Sequence record: MW272540.1
Length of the DNA: 64,000 nucleotides
Direction: 5' to 3' (one strand)
Shown: positions 2,766 to 53,699 of the stretch, one piece after another
Position numbering within the stretch: the first letter of the stretch is position 1
Layout: each line of letters starts with the position of its first letter
Notes under the pieces: model-generated
The model's input: the letters and a program-made list of their open reading frames with translations, nothing else
What the model was told of the DNA's origin: nothing
Database searches by the model: none
Program-made: the position numbers and the translations under genes

Positions 2766-4297
2766 AGTATTACCTCTCTAATTGTATATTCAAATTTTTC
2801 TGAATTGTATTTCTCAATACGAAGTAGACCATGTTTATATAAATAGTTTTTATGACTATATTTAACTGAACCCGGTTTACTCGTTTTTGATTCTATACAA
2901 AGATTATCTATAATGTCCCACAGATACGCCATATCTTTAGAACCATGTTTACGTAAAACACGACCGATTGATTGCAACACAAGGGTTTTTGCCTTAATAC
3001 CGGCTGCAAAAATAACGTGGTGTAGTTTCTTAATAGAAATACCAGTAGAGAAAACACCTAAACTCGCAACGATAATAACACCATCCCCAGCCTCTGCAAT
3101 TTTCTTCAATTCGTCTCGTTCATCAACTTTCGTACCACCATTCGCAAAATAAACTTTATCGTGTTTTTTCTTTAAAGCTTCGTAGAGCAATTTACCATGG
3201 TTAGTATGTCTAAAGAGTACAAGCGTATTTTCTTTCTTCTCTTTAGCTAGTTTCAGAGCTAGTTTACAAATAACCGCATTTCTTCTGGTGTGCTGTTCTA
3301 CGTAATCAATTTCTTGTTTATATTCTATACCCTTAACTAAAATACAATCCTCTTTTGGATATCTTAGCATAAGGCTATTTATTTTTAAGTCCGTTACTTG
3401 ACCTTCTTCCATTAATTGGACGGTGGAGACTGGTTTAAAAACTTCCCCAAACAATCCGACATAAGACATGATGTGACTCTTTCCATCTTTAAGCGAACCA
3501 CTCATACCGAACTTATAAGGGCATTCTGATAGATTGGTGACGATACTTTTGATCTCAGTCCCCAAGTTGTGACATTCGTCGATTATCAGACAACCAAATT
3601 GTTTAAACCAATGTATAGGCTGTTTGGACGCACTTTGCCAAGTAGATACATAGATTGGGGAATCTGAATCTTTGGACCTCCCAGACATAATACCGTGGCT
3701 ATATTTTGGATGCATGAAGCCATAATCTTTAAAATCATCTATCATCTGATTTACAAGACCGGTAGTTGGGACTATTAAAAGAACCTTCCCGCTATAATTG
3801 GTGATATACCAATAACAAATCAACGCCGCAATTAATGATTTACCTGCCGATGTTGGAAGGTTTAAAATACCACGGTTATGTGTGATCGCATAATAAACTG
3901 CATCTGCCTGATACCAATGGGCAGTAATTTTTTCCCCATTGCTAAGGATCTCTATTTCACTAAGCCATTTGTCGAAATCTTCTCTCGATGGGAAATGTAC
4001 ATCAGGAGTAAAATCTTCATCTTTCTCGAACTCGTAATCATTCTTTATACAATATTTTTCTAGATGATTGACTAGTCCATAAGGGAACTTCCCATCTGGT
4101 TGTAAAAGACGGATCCTACCATCCCACCCACTATATCTATATTTTGGGTTAAATTTGGCCCCGTTATCAGTTTCAAAAGAATAGTATTCTCTAAGCTCTC
4201 TAAAAATGTCCTGTTCTGTATCAATCACCGCATGACTATAGTCGTAAAATTTCGCTTTAACTTTCATCATATTCTCACTGTGTTTAAAATTTGTCAT
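2762..4297 (-). CDS. uvsW: UvsW SF2 helicase
   Basis: LPTSAGKSLI, DECH, SGSL, FSTGISIKKLHH, QSIGRVLR. Confidence 0.95.
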   Translation of the reverse strand: MTNFKHSENMMKVKAKFYDYSHAVIDTEQDIFRELREYYSFETDNGAKFNPKYRYSGWDGRIRLLQPDGKFPYGLVNHLEKYCIKNDYEFEKDEDFTPDVHFPSREDFDKWLSEIEILSNGEKITAHWYQADAVYYAITHNRGILNLPTSAGKSLIAALICYWYITNYSGKVLLIVPTTGLVNQMIDDFKDYGFMHPKYSHGIMSGRSKDSDSPIYVSTWQSASKQPIHWFKQFGCLIIDECHNLGTEIKSIVTNLSECPYKFGMSGSLKDGKSHIMSYVGLFGEVFKPVSTVQLMEEGQVTDLKINSLMLRYPKEDCILVKGIEYKQEIDYVEQHTRRNAVICKLALKLAKEKKENTLVLFRHTNHGKLLYEALKKKHDKVYFANGGTKVDERDELKKIAEAGDGVIIVASLGVFSTGISIKKLHHVIFAAGIKAKTLVLQSIGRVLRKHGSKDMAYLWDIIDNLCIESKTSKPGSVKYSHKNYLYKHGLLRIEKYNSEKFEYTIREVIL

Positions 4298-4304
4298 ATA
4301 TGAT

Positions 4305-4324
4305 TATTTAGGGAACTCTAAATA
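4305..4324. promoter_or_regulatory. Back-to-back late-type promoters (CTAAATA on each strand)
   Basis: TATTTAG at 4305-4311 points to uvsW; CTAAATA at 4318-4324 points to the membrane-protein gene. Confidence 0.65.
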
Positions 4325-4368
4325 AATTGGAGGGGATGCATTTTCCCTCTTGTGTAGGGAGAATAAAA

Positions 4369-4737
4369 ATGCTTATTAATAGCAAGTTATTTAAAGACAC
4401 TCTACCAGTCATAACGGTTATTATAGGTATTTGGGTTTCAATATTCTCATACAATGAGTTTATTGCTGACACAAGGCAGATTGCACTAAAAGAAGAGATA
4501 ACATCCCACATGGATAGATCTATAGACACATTACGGACAGAGATTAAGTCGCTACCAAATAAGGAGTCTGTAGAAACTGCACAATTGAGGGCTATGTTAT
4601 ACAGTAAGGATCTAATCGACGAGGTTAATAGGGGGAACCGAGAAGAATTATCTAGACTGGAAAAACGTATCAATGATATGGAAAGTGCAAAAAATGACAT
4701 ACCAAAAAATCGTAAGTATAAAAGCGAGGAAGGTTGA
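4369..4737 (+). CDS. Single-pass membrane protein with C-terminal coiled coil
   Basis: Hydrophobic TLPVITVIIGIWVSIFSY followed by charged heptads; GGGAG SD before ATG 4369. Confidence 0.6.
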   Translation: MLINSKLFKDTLPVITVIIGIWVSIFSYNEFIADTRQIALKEEITSHMDRSIDTLRTEIKSLPNKESVETAQLRAMLYSKDLIDEVNRGNREELSRLEKRINDMESAKNDIPKNRKYKSEEG

Positions 4738-7210: not shown

Positions 7211-8212
7211 ATGATTTTTGTAAAATATAATTCGCTTGAGAACCATTATCGTCAAAACGTGATTGATTCATTTGTACAGTCGGGATATACATCACCCGGC
7301 GTAGAATGGATTGCAATGGAGAAGATCCACGGTACAAACTTTCAAATTGCTGTAGATGATAATTATGTACAGGCTGGGCGACGGACCGACCTTCTGGGAG
7401 ATTTCGACCAGTTTTATGAAGCGGACCTGATTGTTAAGAAATATCACGATAATGCTCGGAATGTTTACAATTTTGTAAAATATCATTATCCAGCCGCCAC
7501 ACAGATTACAATTTTTGGTGAGTATGCAGGTAACCTGACTACTGGTAAGATGATCCAAAAAGAAGTAGAGTATGGTGAACAAGATTTTTACGTGTTTGAT
7601 GTTTTCGTCTTCTCAGGTGATGAAGGGATGTATCTTTCCCATGATTTTGTTATGATGGCGATTGATGGTAACTTTAAACATGCACCAATTATCTATCGAG
7701 GTGATTTTGAAGGTGTCACAAAACTCCCGAACGACTTCCAATCCGTTGTTATCCCAAGTAACAAAGCCGGGAAATTTGGTCTGGTTCAAGGGACCGATAA
7801 CACCGCAGAGGGTTTTGTTGCTAAAACTGTAGAACCGCACTACACCCGCCATGGTCGGACTATTTTCAAATCGAAAAACTCTAAGTTTACGGAGAAAGAG
7901 AAATCCGATAAGCCGGTAAAGGTAAAAGAACCTCTCGGGGAATCCGACCTTGCAATGGTACATGAGATTGCAGAATACATCACGGTAAACCGACTCAAAA
8001 ACGTACTCAGTAAGATTGGTATCCCAACCACTAAAGAGTTTGGTAAAGTTTCCGGTAACCTTTCTAAGGATGCAATTGAGGACTTTACAAAGGATACAGA
8101 AAAGAGTCTTCGTGATGCGGAACGCCCGTCTGATGTGGGTAAAGCAGTGAACAACCTTTCCGGGGAACTGGTTCGGGAACACTGGATGAACATTCTTGAT
8201 GGAAATTTCTAA
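7211..8212 (+). CDS. rnlB: RNA ligase 2
   Basis: Motif I EKIHGTNF, FGEYAG, FYVFDV, EGFV, FKSKNSKF; C-domain RLKNVLSKIG. Confidence 0.92.
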   Translation: MIFVKYNSLENHYRQNVIDSFVQSGYTSPGVEWIAMEKIHGTNFQIAVDDNYVQAGRRTDLLGDFDQFYEADLIVKKYHDNARNVYNFVKYHYPAATQITIFGEYAGNLTTGKMIQKEVEYGEQDFYVFDVFVFSGDEGMYLSHDFVMMAIDGNFKHAPIIYRGDFEGVTKLPNDFQSVVIPSNKAGKFGLVQGTDNTAEGFVAKTVEPHYTRHGRTIFKSKNSKFTEKEKSDKPVKVKEPLGESDLAMVHEIAEYITVNRLKNVLSKIGIPTTKEFGKVSGNLSKDAIEDFTKDTEKSLRDAERPSDVGKAVNNLSGELVREHWMNILDGNF

Positions 8213-8223
8213 AAAATAAATGA

Positions 8224-8260
8224 AAAGGGCTTGCTATCCGGTAAGCCCTTTTGATACTAT
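8224..8260 (+). promoter_or_regulatory. Sigma70-like early promoter overlapping a palindromic terminator
   Basis: TTGCTA-N18-TACTAT; the -35 and spacer lie within AAAAGGGCTT...AAGCCCTTTT. Confidence 0.55.
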
Positions 8261-8295
8261 ATCCATATCGAAACAAGAGACAAAAGGAAAGGTAT

Positions 8296-8937
8296 ATGGA
8301 CCACGTAAAATTCAACGAGATCATGGAAAATGTAGTTGGTATGGTTGAATCCGGGTTTGTTTCCAAGGCCGGTCAGAAACGAGCACTCAACGAATGTACC
8401 AATATGATGAATATGGTACGTGCTGAGTTCTCTTCCTTTTATCTCGACTCCATCAGCTTCGAAGAACGCAATATGAATCTTCCAGAGCATTCCGCAGCGG
8501 TTGACCTTTATTATGCACAACCAAACACAGCAACTTTCGGTAAGTACCTGAAGAAAGCAGAAAGCGCAATGCCTTGGATGGATAAGACCCTGTGTAACGA
8601 GCTGATATCTTTGGGCGAACAAGTTGTGGCAGTTATCGAGACCGTCAAGTCTGCTGAAATCAACGTTCCGGCTCCGAAGGTAAACGAAAAAGAAGTCGCC
8701 ATCAAAGAAAGTATCATGGATATCATGAAACGTCGTGGTGAACAGTACAACCGCTGTCTGCACCTTGATGAAGTTTTCGGATCCATGTGTGTGACTGCCA
8801 ATGTTCACATCGTTCACGGTCACAAAGGTACGGTCTTCCTTCGCGCCTTCTACTACGTTCTTGGTCGTCTGACCCCCCTGAGTGTGATTATCGCAGCCAT
8901 GGAAGAAAGCGCCCGCCGTGAAAAGGCAAACGGATGA
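8296..8937 (+). CDS. Hypothetical protein
   Basis: AGGAAAGG SD; high-expression codon style; coupled to the next ORF. Confidence 0.7.
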   Translation: MDHVKFNEIMENVVGMVESGFVSKAGQKRALNECTNMMNMVRAEFSSFYLDSISFEERNMNLPEHSAAVDLYYAQPNTATFGKYLKKAESAMPWMDKTLCNELISLGEQVVAVIETVKSAEINVPAPKVNEKEVAIKESIMDIMKRRGEQYNRCLHLDEVFGSMCVTANVHIVHGHKGTVFLRAFYYVLGRLTPLSVIIAAMEESARREKANG

Positions 8938-9197
8938 TGAATAAGAAAGCTCATGAGTTAATGGTGGGCCTGCTAAATGCGGGCCTTGATTGTAAGTTGA
9001 TATCGTCATCAACCAGTACATATATTAATGTAGAGGGTCACATGGTTAGAATATCTGATCATCGGGGCCATTCTAAATTTAAAGGTACACAAATCAGAAA
9101 AGATAGTGGATACCAGAAAACAAAATATGGTATGATATTTGGATATGGAGAAATTCCTATGGCGATTAAACATATTAAGAAATGCCTAAATAAGTAA
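8934..9197 (+). CDS. Hypothetical basic protein (VRISDH motif)
   Basis: ATGA overlap with the upstream stop. Confidence 0.6.
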   Translation: MMNKKAHELMVGLLNAGLDCKLISSSTSTYINVEGHMVRISDHRGHSKFKGTQIRKDSGYQKTKYGMIFGYGEIPMAIKHIKKCLNK

Positions 9198-10280: not shown

Positions 10281-10355
10281 ATTATAACATGGTAGAATGA
10301 TATTCTTAATTAAAATTGGATGGATACTTTTTCATCCAATTTTGATTATTTTTTG

Positions 10356-10471
10356 ATCAAAATATTAGTTTCAATTGTAATCAAACTATAGATTCTCTAT
10401 AAGTATTTATATAGAAGATCTATAATTAGAACGAACGAAGTGAGTCGCCGGAGGCGGTTCGCTACGCTCAC
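10356..10471. repeat. Composite repeat copy 1: AT-rich block B (10356-10431) plus 41-bp block A (10431-10471)
   Basis: A (ACGAACGAAGTGAGTCGCCGGAGGCGGTTCGCTACGCTCAC) is identical to 53572-53612; B is a near-identical reverse complement of about 53621-53699. Confidence 0.9.
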
Positions 10472-10508
10472 TATTAATTTATGTATTTAGATGTGTTAGA
10501 ATGACTGT

Positions 10509-11075
10509 ATGAAAAGACGAATCGTAACTCTAATAGGTACTAGATACCCACAAAAAGAATATCAAGACCTAATGGTGCGCATCGGAAAGGCTTTTTCTGA
10601 AAAAGGATATGGTGCTCGTTCTGGTGGTGCTATTGGTTCTGATACTCTATTTTTACAAGAATATGATCCTAAGCTAACTATCATTTATAGACCCGATGAT
10701 AGACCCGGATGTGTGAATGTAAAGAATCATGAAAATTATTATGAATTTGAACTTATTGCCTCACGTGTTCATTGTTTAGGTTCTGGTGTTGGATGGGAAT
10801 TTATGCCTATAGGACATCAAGAACTTCACGCAAGAAATGTACCCCAAGTAATGGGTCTGAATCTAAAAACGTATTCAGATCTTGTGGTGTTCTGTGCCGA
10901 TGAAAATCATCGTGGTACGGTTTCTGGTGGAACAGCAACCGCTGTTAAAATAGCCCGGTCCTTAAATATTCCAACTATCAATATTATGAATGACGAGCAA
11001 AGAAAGAAGCTTTGTCAATGGCTAAAAATAGAAGATATACCGAAATATGAAAAGGTGGACATTTTCAACCTCTAA
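10509..11075 (+). CDS. SLOG-superfamily (DprA/Smf-like) nucleotide-binding protein
   Basis: LIGTR, RSGGAIGSD, LHARN, LVVF, SGGTATAVKIARSLNIP. Confidence 0.75.
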   Translation: MKRRIVTLIGTRYPQKEYQDLMVRIGKAFSEKGYGARSGGAIGSDTLFLQEYDPKLTIIYRPDDRPGCVNVKNHENYYEFELIASRVHCLGSGVGWEFMPIGHQELHARNVPQVMGLNLKTYSDLVVFCADENHRGTVSGGTATAVKIARSLNIPTINIMNDEQRKKLCQWLKIEDIPKYEKVDIFNL

Positions 11076-11114
11076 ATATTATTGTGGAATAGAACAATAA
11101 AAATAGAGGTTTGA

Positions 11115-11459
11115 ATGAAAAACTCACCACGGAAAATAGCTCACAAAGCCCATGATGCAATTCGACGTTTTAATTTGGTTCTTGGAGATACCGATACTTT
11201 ATGGAAAGATGAGCCAGAACGTGTTAAACGTGTTTGGTCTAAACATGTTTCTTATATAATTGACCATCCTGATTCTGACGCAAGAACAGTTCACGATCTA
11301 TGGAGGACATATAAACATAAAGAAGGGTGGATCTTCGGGGAAGAAAAATCATCAGAGGATAAGACACACCCATGTCTTACAACATATGACGACCTTCACG
11401 AAATTGAAAAGATGAAGTATTACATTTTCATGGAAACTATAAAAGAGCATAATAAATAA
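11115..11459 (+). CDS. RyR-domain protein
   Basis: HDLW..YKHKEGWIFGEEKS..KTHPCLTTYDDL..EK matches the RyR repeat consensus H..W..K..GW.YG..D..K.HP.L.PY..L. Confidence 0.8.
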   Translation: MKNSPRKIAHKAHDAIRRFNLVLGDTDTLWKDEPERVKRVWSKHVSYIIDHPDSDARTVHDLWRTYKHKEGWIFGEEKSSEDKTHPCLTTYDDLHEIEKMKYYIFMETIKEHNK

Positions 11460-11489
11460 AAAAGCCCCGACCAAAATCGGGGCTTTTTC
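11460..11489. terminator. Bidirectional terminator
   Basis: AAAAGCCCCGA-loop-TCGGGGCTTTT between convergent genes. Confidence 0.8.
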
Positions 11490-12931: not shown

Positions 12932-12974
12932 TTTGATTTGTTCCTTGAATAGTTTATTTTATTTAGGCCAAACG

Positions 12975-18642: not shown

Positions 18643-18722
18643 TTATGAGGGTTCCTTTAACTTTATCTATAATTATTTAGGGGGATAAAATTTAAGGAGG
18701 GGGAATAATCCCCCAACCCGCA

Positions 18723-53571: not shown

Positions 53572-53699
53572 ACGAACGAAGTGAGTCGCCGGAGGCGGTT
53601 CGCTACGCTCACAGATTACTTTCTAATTATAGATCTTCTATATAAATACTTATAGAAACTTTATAGTTTGATTGCAAGTGAAACTAATATTTTTTGATT
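53572..53699. repeat. Composite repeat copy 2: block A (53572-53612) plus reverse-complement block B (53621-53699)
   Basis: See copy 1; contains TATAAATA at 53641. Confidence 0.9.

What the first reader, a model, noticed from the sequence alone, without database searches (positions are those of the whole stretch)
10509..11459. Adjacent SLOG and RyR-domain genes: candidate anti-Thoeris/nucleotide-signal module
Seen: a stand-alone SLOG/DprA-like protein directly followed by a 114-aa protein with a clear RyR repeat; both are co-oriented and closed by one terminator, with a CTAAATA at 11072 between them. Known: SLOG is the gcADPR-sensing domain of the Thoeris effector ThsA and binds nucleotides in other conflict systems. 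From memory, and needing verification, phage RyR-domain proteins have been reported to hydrolyse gcADPR signals. Inference: a two-gene counter-defence unit, with SLOG as sponge or nucleotide-processing enzyme and RyR as signal-degrading enzyme. I do not know of this pairing being characterised.
Basis: partly seen in the sequence, partly recalled or inferred. Interest (0 to 1): 0.8.

Follow-up and report, generated by a model that had tools for sequence, protein, structure and literature searches.

The report
Adjacent phage SLOG and RyR genes
Two neighbouring genes of an Aeromonas T4-like phage encode a RyR-domain protein, from a family shown in 2026 to neutralise bacterial cyclic ADP-ribose alarm signals, and an uncharacterised SLOG nucleotide-binding protein; the first is a new, slightly odd member of a known kind, and the second is a plausible but unproven companion.

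Summary
The window is Aeromonas phage ZPAH1. ORF A (10509-11075, 188 aa) is a stand-alone SLOG-fold protein. ORF B (11115-11459, 114 aa) carries a RyR domain above Pfam's cut-off. A terminator lies on each side of the pair, and the CTAAATA at 11072 matches a genuine promoter-like motif of this phage.

Two 2026 preprints describe RyDEP (a 2'/3'cADPR glycosidase, PDB 35TM) and RyR Tad (a gcADPR sponge). ORF B keeps five ligand-binding residues of those proteins. It has Tyr102 where RyDEP has its catalytic Asp117, so a sponge is more likely than an enzyme.

ORF A belongs to a very large viral SLOG family. Other members are often fused to NADAR, DUF4326 or Macro domains. The family was predicted in 2022 to sense or process ADP-ribose derivatives and has not been tested.

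The adjacency is fixed in Aeromonas T4-like phages of at least five lineages, down to about 31-39% identity. It is absent elsewhere: 0 of 77 SLOG loci and 0 of 77 RyR loci from other phages have the partner within 5 kb.

The best reading is two autonomous ADPR-signal counter-defence modules that sit together, not an obligate two-gene system. Interest is moderate.

The parts
10281..10508 (+). Upstream intergenic region. It holds a terminator-like hairpin (10307-10348) that ends the preceding transcription unit, then a repeated intergenic element (about 10359-10480) that is the candidate promoter region for ORF A.
   Evidence: Terminator scan. A second copy of the element lies at 53572-53693 on the - strand. 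It occurs at 8 places in the ZPAH1 genome and 4-6 in related phages. No promoter could be assigned with confidence.
10509..11075 (+). ORF A: a stand-alone SLOG-fold (DprA-like Rossmannoid) protein of 188 aa, member of the widespread 'viral SLOG' family (phrog_768).
   Evidence: phrog_768 at E 2.8e-53. AF2 pLDDT 92.8. Foldseek against PDB finds DprA, ShosA, Moco-carrier, LOG and ThsA. Foldseek against viral models gives TM 0.73-0.80 to phage 'DprA-like' proteins. Columns invariant in 17 relatives include G10, R12, R37, S38, G39, D45, L106-N110 and G141-A145. The family has 6206 representative clusters.
11072..11078 (+). CTAAATA promoter-like motif (late type in this phage group) overlapping the ORF A stop codon, 36 nt upstream of the ORF B start.
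   Evidence: The motif is enriched (32 against 15.3) and positioned upstream of same-strand ORFs, 17 of 32 against 1.1 expected. It is conserved in CC2.
11106..11109 (+). GAGG ribosome-binding site for ORF B, 5 nt before the ATG.
   Evidence: Read directly from the sequence.
11115..11459 (+). ORF B: a single-repeat RyR (Repeat12-like) domain protein of 114 aa, member of the RyDEP / RyR Tad family, with Tyr102 in place of the catalytic or binding Asp.
   Evidence: Pfam PF02026 at 43.1 bits. PDB sequence hits include 35tm. Residue mapping onto DyoEdafos gp78 and CB1 gp68. The AF2 model has four helices, pLDDT 84.3.
11459..11488 (.). Bidirectional intrinsic-terminator-like hairpin shared with the convergent head-gene operon.
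   Evidence: Terminator scan, detected on both strands.

Best explanation
ORF B is a member of the viral RyR-domain family (RyDEP / RyR Tad) that counters Thoeris-type TIR signalling. By analogy it forms a homodimer whose pocket binds 2'cADPR, 3'cADPR or related ADPR-derived signals. Because the catalytic acid is replaced by Tyr, it most likely sequesters the signal (sponge) rather than cleaving it. ORF A is a member of the large stand-alone viral SLOG family. It most likely binds or processes an ADP-ribose-derived nucleotide of its own, as a second and independent counter-measure. The two genes form one terminator-bounded unit in Aeromonas T4-like phages. ORF A is read from an upstream promoter that was not identified. 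ORF B is read through from it and additionally from its own late-type CTAAATA promoter. They are co-located modules with a common theme, not an obligate two-component system.

Shown: domain identities, residue mapping, transcription-unit anatomy and distribution.

Inferred: ligand binding, sponge mode, dimerisation, timing of expression, and any ADPR-related role of ORF A.
For: - **RyR family membership:** Pfam RyR is above cut-off and there is a sequence match to PDB 35tm, the RyDEP structure (PMC13232231).
- **Binding residues:** gap-free BLASTP puts H60, W63 and H85 on RyDEP H75, W78 and H100. K78 and K101 fall on RyR Tad K147 and K170. These five columns are 70/70 conserved in distinct viral RyR domains.
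- **Catalytic position:** Y102 replaces D117/D171. That column is D in 68 of 70 and Y in 2, and Y is invariant in the close clade.
- **Published activities:** six of eight tested RyDEP homologues bound the signals and none of the eight cleaved them; two were characterised as sponges (PMC13232231). CB1 gp68 is a sponge (10.64898/2026.06.04.730250).
- **SLOG fold:**
- **SLOG family context:** of 46 multidomain members among the 150 best family representatives, 8 carry DUF4326, 7 NADAR, 1 Macro and 1 MazG. A Macro-domain gene recurs as a neighbour in 5 of 80 loci. This is the architecture described for viral SLOG in PMC9503650.
- **Adjacency within Aeromonas Straboviridae:** it is kept in ZPAH1 and Aswh_1, the CC2 group, the phage 65 group, Aeh1, Ah1 and AsFcp_2, down to 39% (SLOG) and 31-34% (RyR) identity. 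The gap is 32-39 bp while flanking accessory genes differ.
- **Transcription unit:** terminators flank the pair and ORF B has a promoter-like motif.
Against: - No binding, cleavage or expression data exist for either protein.
- The Tyr at the Asp position could weaken binding; the K170A/D171A double mutant of RyR Tad bound about 100-fold worse.
- The RyR monomer model gave no significant Foldseek match.
- ORF A's best structural matches are ssDNA-binding proteins, DprA and ShosA, and some family members are fused to helicase or exonuclease domains.
- Outside Aeromonas phages the two families never sit together in the samples taken. The adjacency may simply be inherited from one insertion next to an older SLOG gene. 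In PM2 the SLOG gene sits at the same site, next to gp24, with no RyR gene.
- A late-type promoter is not what one expects of an early-acting counter-defence gene.
Confidence: 0.55

Rival explanations
1. Obligate two-step unit. The RyR protein captures or opens the cyclic signal and the SLOG protein then destroys the product or a second bond, so the pair works only together.
For: The genes are adjacent, on the same strand and 32-39 bp apart, with no terminator between them, in every Aeromonas RyR-bearing phage checked. The pair persists across deep divergence while its neighbours change. There is a precedent for RyDEP feeding a neighbouring pathway, NARP1 (PMC13232231). SLOG was predicted to act on ADPR derivatives (PMC9503650).
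Against: 0 of 77 non-Aeromonas SLOG loci have a RyR gene within 5 kb. 0 of 77 non-Aeromonas RyR loci have a SLOG gene within 5 kb. RyDEP and RyR Tad are each sufficient alone in the published work. ORF B lacks the catalytic Asp. ORF B has its own promoter-like motif. No SLOG-RyR fusion was seen among 46 multidomain SLOG proteins or in the RyR proteins examined.
Confidence: 0.15
2. ORF A is a DprA/ShosA-like ssDNA-binding or recombinase-loading protein, possibly an antitoxin mimic. It has nothing to do with ORF B, and the adjacency is a historical accident in a variable region next to the head genes.
For: The best Foldseek matches are the H. pylori DprA Rossmann domain (E 1.5e-6) and ShosA (E 3.2e-5). 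PADLOC gives ShosA at E 1.6e-5. The loops after the first two strands align with DprA, and R12 aligns with the DprA Arg in the GTR loop. There are sporadic family fusions to AAA_30 helicase and a PolB exonuclease. The SLOG gene sits at the same site without RyR in PM2. uvsW and uvsY lie a few kb away.
Against: Similarity to DprA is limited to the first 50 or so residues. The Pfam and TIGRFAM DprA cut-offs are not met. There are no SAM or winged-helix domains. Family-specific invariant polar residues (R37, H107, R109, N110, T142, T144, N158) look like a small-ligand or catalytic site. The commonest fusion partners are NADAR and DUF4326, not DNA-handling domains.
Confidence: 0.2
3. ORF B is an active glycosidase like DyoEdafos RyDEP, with Tyr102 or another residue substituting for the missing acid.
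For: The catalytic His equivalent (H60) and all other pocket residues are kept. The Asp-to-Tyr change is conserved rather than random and recurs once independently, in L149.
Against: D117 is one half of the catalytic dyad required for cleavage in RyDEP (PMC13232231). Homologues that do keep the Asp were non-catalytic in that study. The column is Asp in 68 of 70 sequences.
Confidence: 0.07

Closest known systems
RyDEP (Mycobacterium phage DyoEdafos gp78; PDB 35TM; PMC13232231)
   Same: A single RyR/Repeat12-like domain of similar size (138 aa against 114 aa). Identity is 32% over 53 residues without gaps. H75, W78 and H100 are conserved as H60, W63 and H85. The predicted layout has four helices. 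Both are phage-encoded accessory genes.
   Different: The catalytic D117 is Tyr102 here. The genomic context is a SLOG gene next to the head genes, not a NARP1 NAD+-reconstitution operon. Cleavage is therefore not expected.
RyR Tad (Pectobacterium phage vB_PatP_CB1 gp68; 10.64898/2026.06.04.730250) and the sponge-type RyDEP homologues H4 and H7
   Same: Identity is 33% over 103 residues. The binding residues H129, W132, K147, H154 and K170 are all conserved. This is the likely mode of action: sequestration of 3'cADPR, 2'cADPR or cADPR.
   Different: gp68 has an extra N-terminal domain. The Kuttervirus homologue has an N4 gp49-like domain, PF13876, in that position. ORF B is the RyR domain alone. 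D171 is Tyr here.
Viral stand-alone SLOG domains as surveyed by Iyer, Burroughs, Anantharaman and Aravind 2022 (PMC9503650)
   Same: ORF A's family shows the architecture they describe: mostly stand-alone proteins, with fusions to NADAR, DUF4326 and Macro and sporadic fusions to helicase or exonuclease. It is common in large phages.
   Different: That work predicts cleavage or sensing of ADPR derivatives and has no experiment. It does not mention RyR domains (0 occurrences). It assigns most viral SLOGs to the YpsA-like clade, whereas ORF A's best structural matches are DprA and ShosA.
DprA (bacterial recombination mediator) and ShosA (antitoxin of the Shosta defence system; PMC12961424)
   Same: The same Rossmannoid SLOG fold, and shared glycine-rich loops after strands 1 and 2.
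   Different: ORF A has no SAM or C-terminal domains. It falls below the family cut-offs. The rest of the sequence carries family-specific motifs. ssDNA or RecA binding was not tested.
SLOG domain of the Thoeris effector ThsA (gcADPR sensor)
   Same: Same superfamily (Foldseek E 3.7e-3 for EcThsA and 1.4e-2 for the BcThsA SLOG-3'cADPR complex).
   Different: It ranks below DprA, ShosA, Moco-carrier and LOG-like proteins. There is no Sir2 partner domain. No evidence was obtained that the gcADPR-binding residues are shared.

Membership tests
RyDEP / RyR Tad family (viral RyR Repeat12-domain proteins, Pfam PF02026) | RyR-domain profile match above the curated threshold | tested here: met
   PF02026 at 43.1 bits against a cut-off of 27.4, E 5.1e-11. 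PDB hits to RyR3 R12 and to 35tm.
RyDEP / RyR Tad family | Ligand-pocket residues: His and Trp on helix 3, Lys and His in the following loop, and Lys at the start of helix 4 | tested here: met
   H60, W63, K78, H85 and K101 map onto RyDEP H75, W78 and H100 and onto RyR Tad H129, W132, K147, H154 and K170. These columns are 70/70 conserved.
RyDEP glycosidase subclass | Catalytic dyad His75 + Asp117 | tested here: not met
   The His is present (H60). The Asp is replaced by Tyr102 in a gap-free alignment. The Tyr is invariant in 6 close relatives. The column is D in 68 of 70 viral RyR domains.
RyDEP / RyR Tad family | Homodimer through helices 1 and 4; binding of 2'cADPR or 3'cADPR; relief of Thoeris defence | not testable with these tools
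   Only a monomer could be modelled. No ligand or phenotype data exist.
SLOG superfamily | Three-layer Rossmannoid fold with glycine-rich nucleotide-binding loops after strands 1, 2 and 4 | tested here: met
   AF2 pLDDT 92.8 with alternating strands and helices. Foldseek matches to DprA, ShosA, Moco-carrier, LOG, ThsA and YpsA. Invariant G10/R12, S38-G39/D45 and G141-T142.
DprA proper (recombination mediator) | Family profile above cut-off, and the accessory SAM and winged-helix domains | tested here: not met
   PF02481 at 17.9 bits against 29.6. TIGR00732 at 14.5 against 191. The profile aligns only over residues 6-54. The protein is 188 aa and a single domain.
Viral SLOG family of PMC9503650 (ADPR-derivative processing or sensing, predicted) | Stand-alone in phages, with recurrent fusions to NADAR, DUF4326 and Macro | tested here: met
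   Among 46 multidomain family members: DUF4326 in 8, NADAR in 7, Macro in 1 and MazG in 1. Macro recurs as a neighbour in 5 of 80 loci. The predicted activity itself has not been tested by anyone.
ThsA-type gcADPR-sensing SLOG | Specific similarity to the ThsA SLOG and its ligand-binding residues | tested here: inconclusive
   Resemblance is at superfamily level only (E 3.7e-3 and 1.4e-2, ranks 27 and 41). Residue-level superposition was not possible with the tools.
Conserved two-gene SLOG-RyR system | Adjacency or fusion recurring across unrelated phage lineages | tested here: not met
   The genes are adjacent only in Aeromonas Straboviridae: 3 of 80 SLOG loci and 3 of 80 RyR loci, all from that clade. 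No fusions were seen.

The most novel reading that the evidence does not exclude
ORF A would be the first member of the very large viral SLOG family (6206 representative clusters; 1422 of 50,697 phage records) shown to act on TIR-derived ADPR signals, as a sponge or as an N-glycosidase. It would cooperate with a Tyr-variant RyR sponge, so that the pair covers two different signals or two bonds of one signal. That would define a new anti-Thoeris protein family. It would also give the Asp-to-Tyr RyR variants a distinct ligand specificity.
Probability: 0.2. Interest if true: 0.75.

Novelty: new variant of a known kind. Interest (0 to 1): 0.45.

Why it matters
The RyR half was surprising a year ago but is now described, so ZPAH1 adds a member. 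It is an informative one: a natural variant at the catalytic or binding Asp position, fixed in one phage clade. That bears on how the family switches between cleaving and sequestering signals.

The SLOG half touches an open question. Thousands of phages carry this stand-alone SLOG protein, and its role has only been predicted. Stable linkage to a RyDEP-family gene in Aeromonas T4-like phages is independent contextual support for an ADPR-signal role, and it points to a concrete, small and well-modelled protein to study. The linkage is limited to one lineage, so its weight is modest.

Tried and rejected
- **Foldseek of the ORF B monomer model against PDB:** no significant match. The best was RyR3 R12 at E 1.0, so the sequence evidence was used instead.
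- **Word-indexed homologue searches:** they returned only close relatives, 5 and 17 proteins.
- **Single-protein locus scans:** they found 1-2 loci. The 8-sequence RyR alignment was too divergent for pattern scanning, and a 5-sequence one worked.
- **A dominant conserved neighbour of the SLOG gene:** none found. The largest neighbour cluster covers 7 of 80 loci.
- **SLOG domains fused to or next to RyR in other phages:**
  - The Kuttervirus RyR protein has an N4 gp49-like N-domain, not SLOG.
  - Vibrio phage vB_VmeM-32 has RyR alone.
  - DyoEdafos gp89, annotated 'DprA-like', is not of ORF A's family (hhalign probability 1.3%).
- **The GenBank label 'RNA ligase' for ORF A:** rejected, because no ligase family matches.
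- **A sigma-70-type promoter for ORF A:** rejected. Matches in the region are no more frequent than in shuffles, 8 against 7.8.
- **The classical 8-base late box:** it is not enriched in the window, 6 against 7.3. CTAAATA is the motif that behaves like a promoter.
- **Literature searches:** no experimental work on phage SLOG proteins of this family was found.

Full report
**Identity of the window and the observation**

The 1.2-kb region is 100% identical to Aeromonas phage ZPAH1 (MW272540.1; Straboviridae, Emmerichvirinae, Ishigurovirus; host A. hydrophila). Both ORFs are present as described.
- ORF A runs 10509-11075 and encodes 188 aa.
- ORF B runs 11115-11459 and encodes 114 aa.
- Both are on the + strand, separated by 39 bp.

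The pair lies between the inh region and the convergent head-gene operon (gp24, gp23 and onward). A terminator-like hairpin precedes the pair at 10307-10348. A bidirectional one closes it at 11459-11488, and none lies between the genes.

**The CTAAATA motif**

CTAAATA occurs 32 times in the window against 15.3 expected, and none of 100 shuffles reached that number. 17 of the 32 copies lie within 60 nt upstream of a same-strand ORF start, against 1.1 expected for random sites. These include sites before gp24, the portal gene and inh.

It therefore behaves as a promoter box of this phage, presumably the late one; the class is my inference. The copy at 11072-11078 is 36 nt upstream of the ORF B start and is conserved in CC2. 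ORF A has no such box on its strand. Its upstream intergenic region carries a repeated element instead.

**ORF B**

ORF B matches Pfam RyR (PF02026) at 43.1 bits, above the 27.4-bit cut-off. It matches RyR3 Repeat12 crystal structures and PDB 35tm by sequence.

- PMC13232231 (bioRxiv, May 2026) describes RyDEP, which is DyoEdafos gp78 (structure 35TM). It is an inverting glycosidase that opens the ribose-ribose bond of 2'cADPR and 3'cADPR. The catalytic dyad is H75/D117, W78 stacks on the adenine, and H100 sits on the phosphates. Six of eight tested homologues bound the signals; none of the eight cleaved them, and two acted as sponges.
- 10.64898/2026.06.04.730250 describes RyR Tad (CB1 gp68), a sponge for 3'cADPR, 2'cADPR and cADPR. 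Its binding residues are H129/W132, K147/H154 and K170/D171.

I fetched both proteins by the accessions given in the papers and compared them with ORF B.
- Gap-free BLASTP places ORF B H60, W63, H85 and Y102 on RyDEP H75, W78, H100 and D117.
- BLASTP to gp68 places K78, K101 and Y102 on K147, K170 and D171 (multiple alignment).
- In 70 distinct viral RyR domains from IMG/VR, the His, Trp, Lys, His and Lys columns are invariant. The last column is Asp in 68 and Tyr in 2.
- The Tyr is invariant in ORF B's six close relatives.

ORF B is thus a clear family member that lacks the catalytic acid. I read it as sponge-type, with the caveat that the same Asp also contributes to binding in RyR Tad. The AF2 monomer model has the expected four helices at pLDDT 84.3, but Foldseek gave nothing significant with it.

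**ORF A**

ORF A matches phrog_768 ('DprA-like') at E 2.8e-53. Pfam DprA and TIGR00732 are both far below their cut-offs. PADLOC gives ShosA at E 1.6e-5.

An AF2 model built on 17 relatives is confident, with pLDDT 92.8. Foldseek against PDB ranks the matches as follows.

| Match | Foldseek E-value |
|---|---|
| H. pylori DprA Rossmann domain (TM 0.52) | 1.5e-6 |
| ShosA | 3.2e-5 |
| Moco-carrier protein | 2.4e-4 |
| TT1465, a conserved hypothetical protein | 2.7e-4 |
| Type-II LOG (C. glutamicum) | 3.1e-3 |
| EcThsA | 3.7e-3 |
| BcThsA SLOG with 3'cADPR | 1.4e-2 |
| YpsA | 1.6e-2 |

This gives SLOG superfamily membership with no special affinity to ThsA. Against viral models it matches many phage 'DprA-like' proteins at TM 0.73-0.80.

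Profile similarity to DprA covers only the first 50 or so residues. The rest carries family-specific invariant polar residues: R37, H107, R109, N110, T142, T144 and N158.

The family is very large.
- It has 6206 representative clusters at E <= 1e-3 in the 1.84-billion-protein library.
- It occurs in 1422 of 50,697 phage records.

Among the 150 best representatives, 46 are multidomain. Of those, 8 carry DUF4326, 7 NADAR, 1 Macro and 1 MazG, with single cases of helicase and exonuclease fusions. This is the picture drawn for viral SLOG domains in PMC9503650. That paper predicts that they sense or cleave ADP-ribose derivatives and states that they are experimentally uncharacterised. I found no later experimental paper. 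The GenBank product name 'RNA ligase' is unsupported.

**Is the pairing meaningful?**

Within Aeromonas Straboviridae, yes, as a conserved arrangement. The SLOG gene lies directly upstream of the RyR gene, on the same strand and 32-39 bp away, in all of these:
- ZPAH1 and Aswh_1;
- the CC2 group (more than 12 records);
- avDM6, 65 and 65.2;
- Aeh1, Ah1, phiWae14 and AsFcp_2.

This is every Aeromonas RyR record whose coordinates I could compare. Identity falls to 39% for SLOG and 31-34% for RyR, and the accessory genes between inh and the pair differ between lineages.

Outside that clade the answer is no.
- Of 80 IMG/VR loci retrieved with the SLOG profile, only the 3 Aeromonas phages have a RyR gene within 5 kb.
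- Of 80 loci retrieved with the RyR profile, only 3 have a SLOG gene within 5 kb, and these are phage 65, Aeh1 and Ah1.

RyR domains elsewhere occur in other contexts:
- alone;
- fused to an N4 gp49-like domain, in Kuttervirus; CB1 gp68 also carries an N-terminal domain of unknown function;
- inside a NARP1 operon in DyoEdafos.

The SLOG gene has no dominant neighbour; the largest cluster covers 7 of 80 loci. In Pectobacterium phage PM2 it occupies the same site, between rnlB and gp24, with no RyR gene. The simplest history is one insertion of a RyR gene between an older SLOG gene and the shared terminator in an ancestor of these Aeromonas phages.

**Mechanism, with likelihoods**

- Most likely (about 0.55): two autonomous counter-defence modules with a common ADPR-signal theme, co-transcribed.
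  - ORF B would be a dimeric sponge for TIR-derived cyclic ADPR signals.
  - ORF A would be a binder or processor of an ADPR-derived nucleotide.
- An extra late-type promoter on ORF B would fit a stoichiometric sponge needed when late proteins appear. Structural proteins determine Thoeris sensitivity in the second preprint. This link is inference.
- Rivals: an obligate two-step unit (0.15); ORF A as a DprA/ShosA-like DNA-handling protein unrelated to ORF B (0.2); ORF B as an active glycosidase despite the Tyr (0.07).

**Novelty and verdict**

The RyR family and its anti-Thoeris role are already described, so ORF B is a new member with a variant key residue. The SLOG family is a known and predicted kind that remains uncharacterised. 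The SLOG-RyR linkage is, as far as the library shows, not described, but it is confined to one phage clade. I rate the finding a new variant of a known kind, with interest 0.45.

In the GenBank record of Aeromonas phage 65 both genes are interrupted, by one frameshift each as judged by tblastn. In 65.2 both are intact. The scripts printed piece coordinates for that locus before I applied the rule about breaks. I do not repeat or use them.

I also recalled short family motifs while reasoning. No conclusion rests on them.

Noticed in passing
window, 32 sites, e.g. 9186-9192 (+), 11072-11078 (+), 12960-12966 (-), 18674-18680 (-): CTAAATA behaves as this phage's promoter box, presumably the late one. 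It occurs 32 times against 15.3 expected. 17 of the 32 lie within 60 nt upstream of same-strand ORF starts, against 1.1 expected at random, and its strand follows gene orientation. The classical 8-base box searched is not enriched (6 against 7.3).
   Followed up: partly
window 10359-10480 (+) and 53572-53693 (-): A repeated intergenic element of about 120 bp. It occurs at 8 places in the ZPAH1 and Aswh_1 genomes and at 4-6 in Ceceduovirus phages. A conserved AT-rich part is followed by a GC-rich hairpin, and the hairpin is in opposite orientation in the two window copies. It may be a mobile promoter/stem-loop cassette of the kind known in T4-type phages (from memory, not tested).
   Followed up: partly
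window 10509-11075: The GenBank record names ORF A 'RNA ligase' (QQG34024.1). No ligase family matches it in Pfam, PHROGs or NCBIfam. The name is probably a transfer from the nearby rnlB gene.
   Followed up: yes
L012 (PM2) 2981-4546; L013 (Matisse) 2962-4552; L016 (DyoEdafos) 7387-9170: The SLOG gene directly follows RNA ligase 2 (rnlB) in PM2 and Matisse, and Matisse has a nicotinamide phosphoribosyltransferase gene 1.3 kb downstream. DyoEdafos has an unrelated 'DprA-like' gene next to an RNA ligase. This recurring proximity of SLOG-like and RNA-ligase genes is unexplained.
   Followed up: no
L010 (Salmonella phage Marshall) 5452-6324; L015 (CB1) 2773-3324: In Kuttervirus phages the RyR domain is the C-terminal half of a 290-aa protein whose N-terminal part is an N4 gp49 / Sf6 gp66-like domain (PF13876). 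CB1 gp68 also has an N-terminal domain, which the preprint describes as a fold of unknown function; I did not scan it against Pfam.
   Followed up: partly
L009 (Vibrio phage vB_VmeM-32) 6001-6351; L149: The VmeM-32 RyR protein has Trp at the catalytic-His column and sits alone between two terminators at the head-gene boundary. L149, an unrelated 36.6-kb viral contig, independently has Tyr at the Asp column.
   Followed up: no
L004 / L019 / L098 (Aeromonas phage 65): In the phage 65 record both the SLOG and the RyR gene are interrupted, by one frameshift each. The near-identical phage 65.2 has both intact, so sequencing error or recent decay cannot be told apart.
   Followed up: partly
P0023, P0024: Two proteins of about 1480 aa contain two or three tandem copies of this SLOG domain plus a C-terminal NADAR domain. 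These are polyvalent-protein-like architectures.
   Followed up: no
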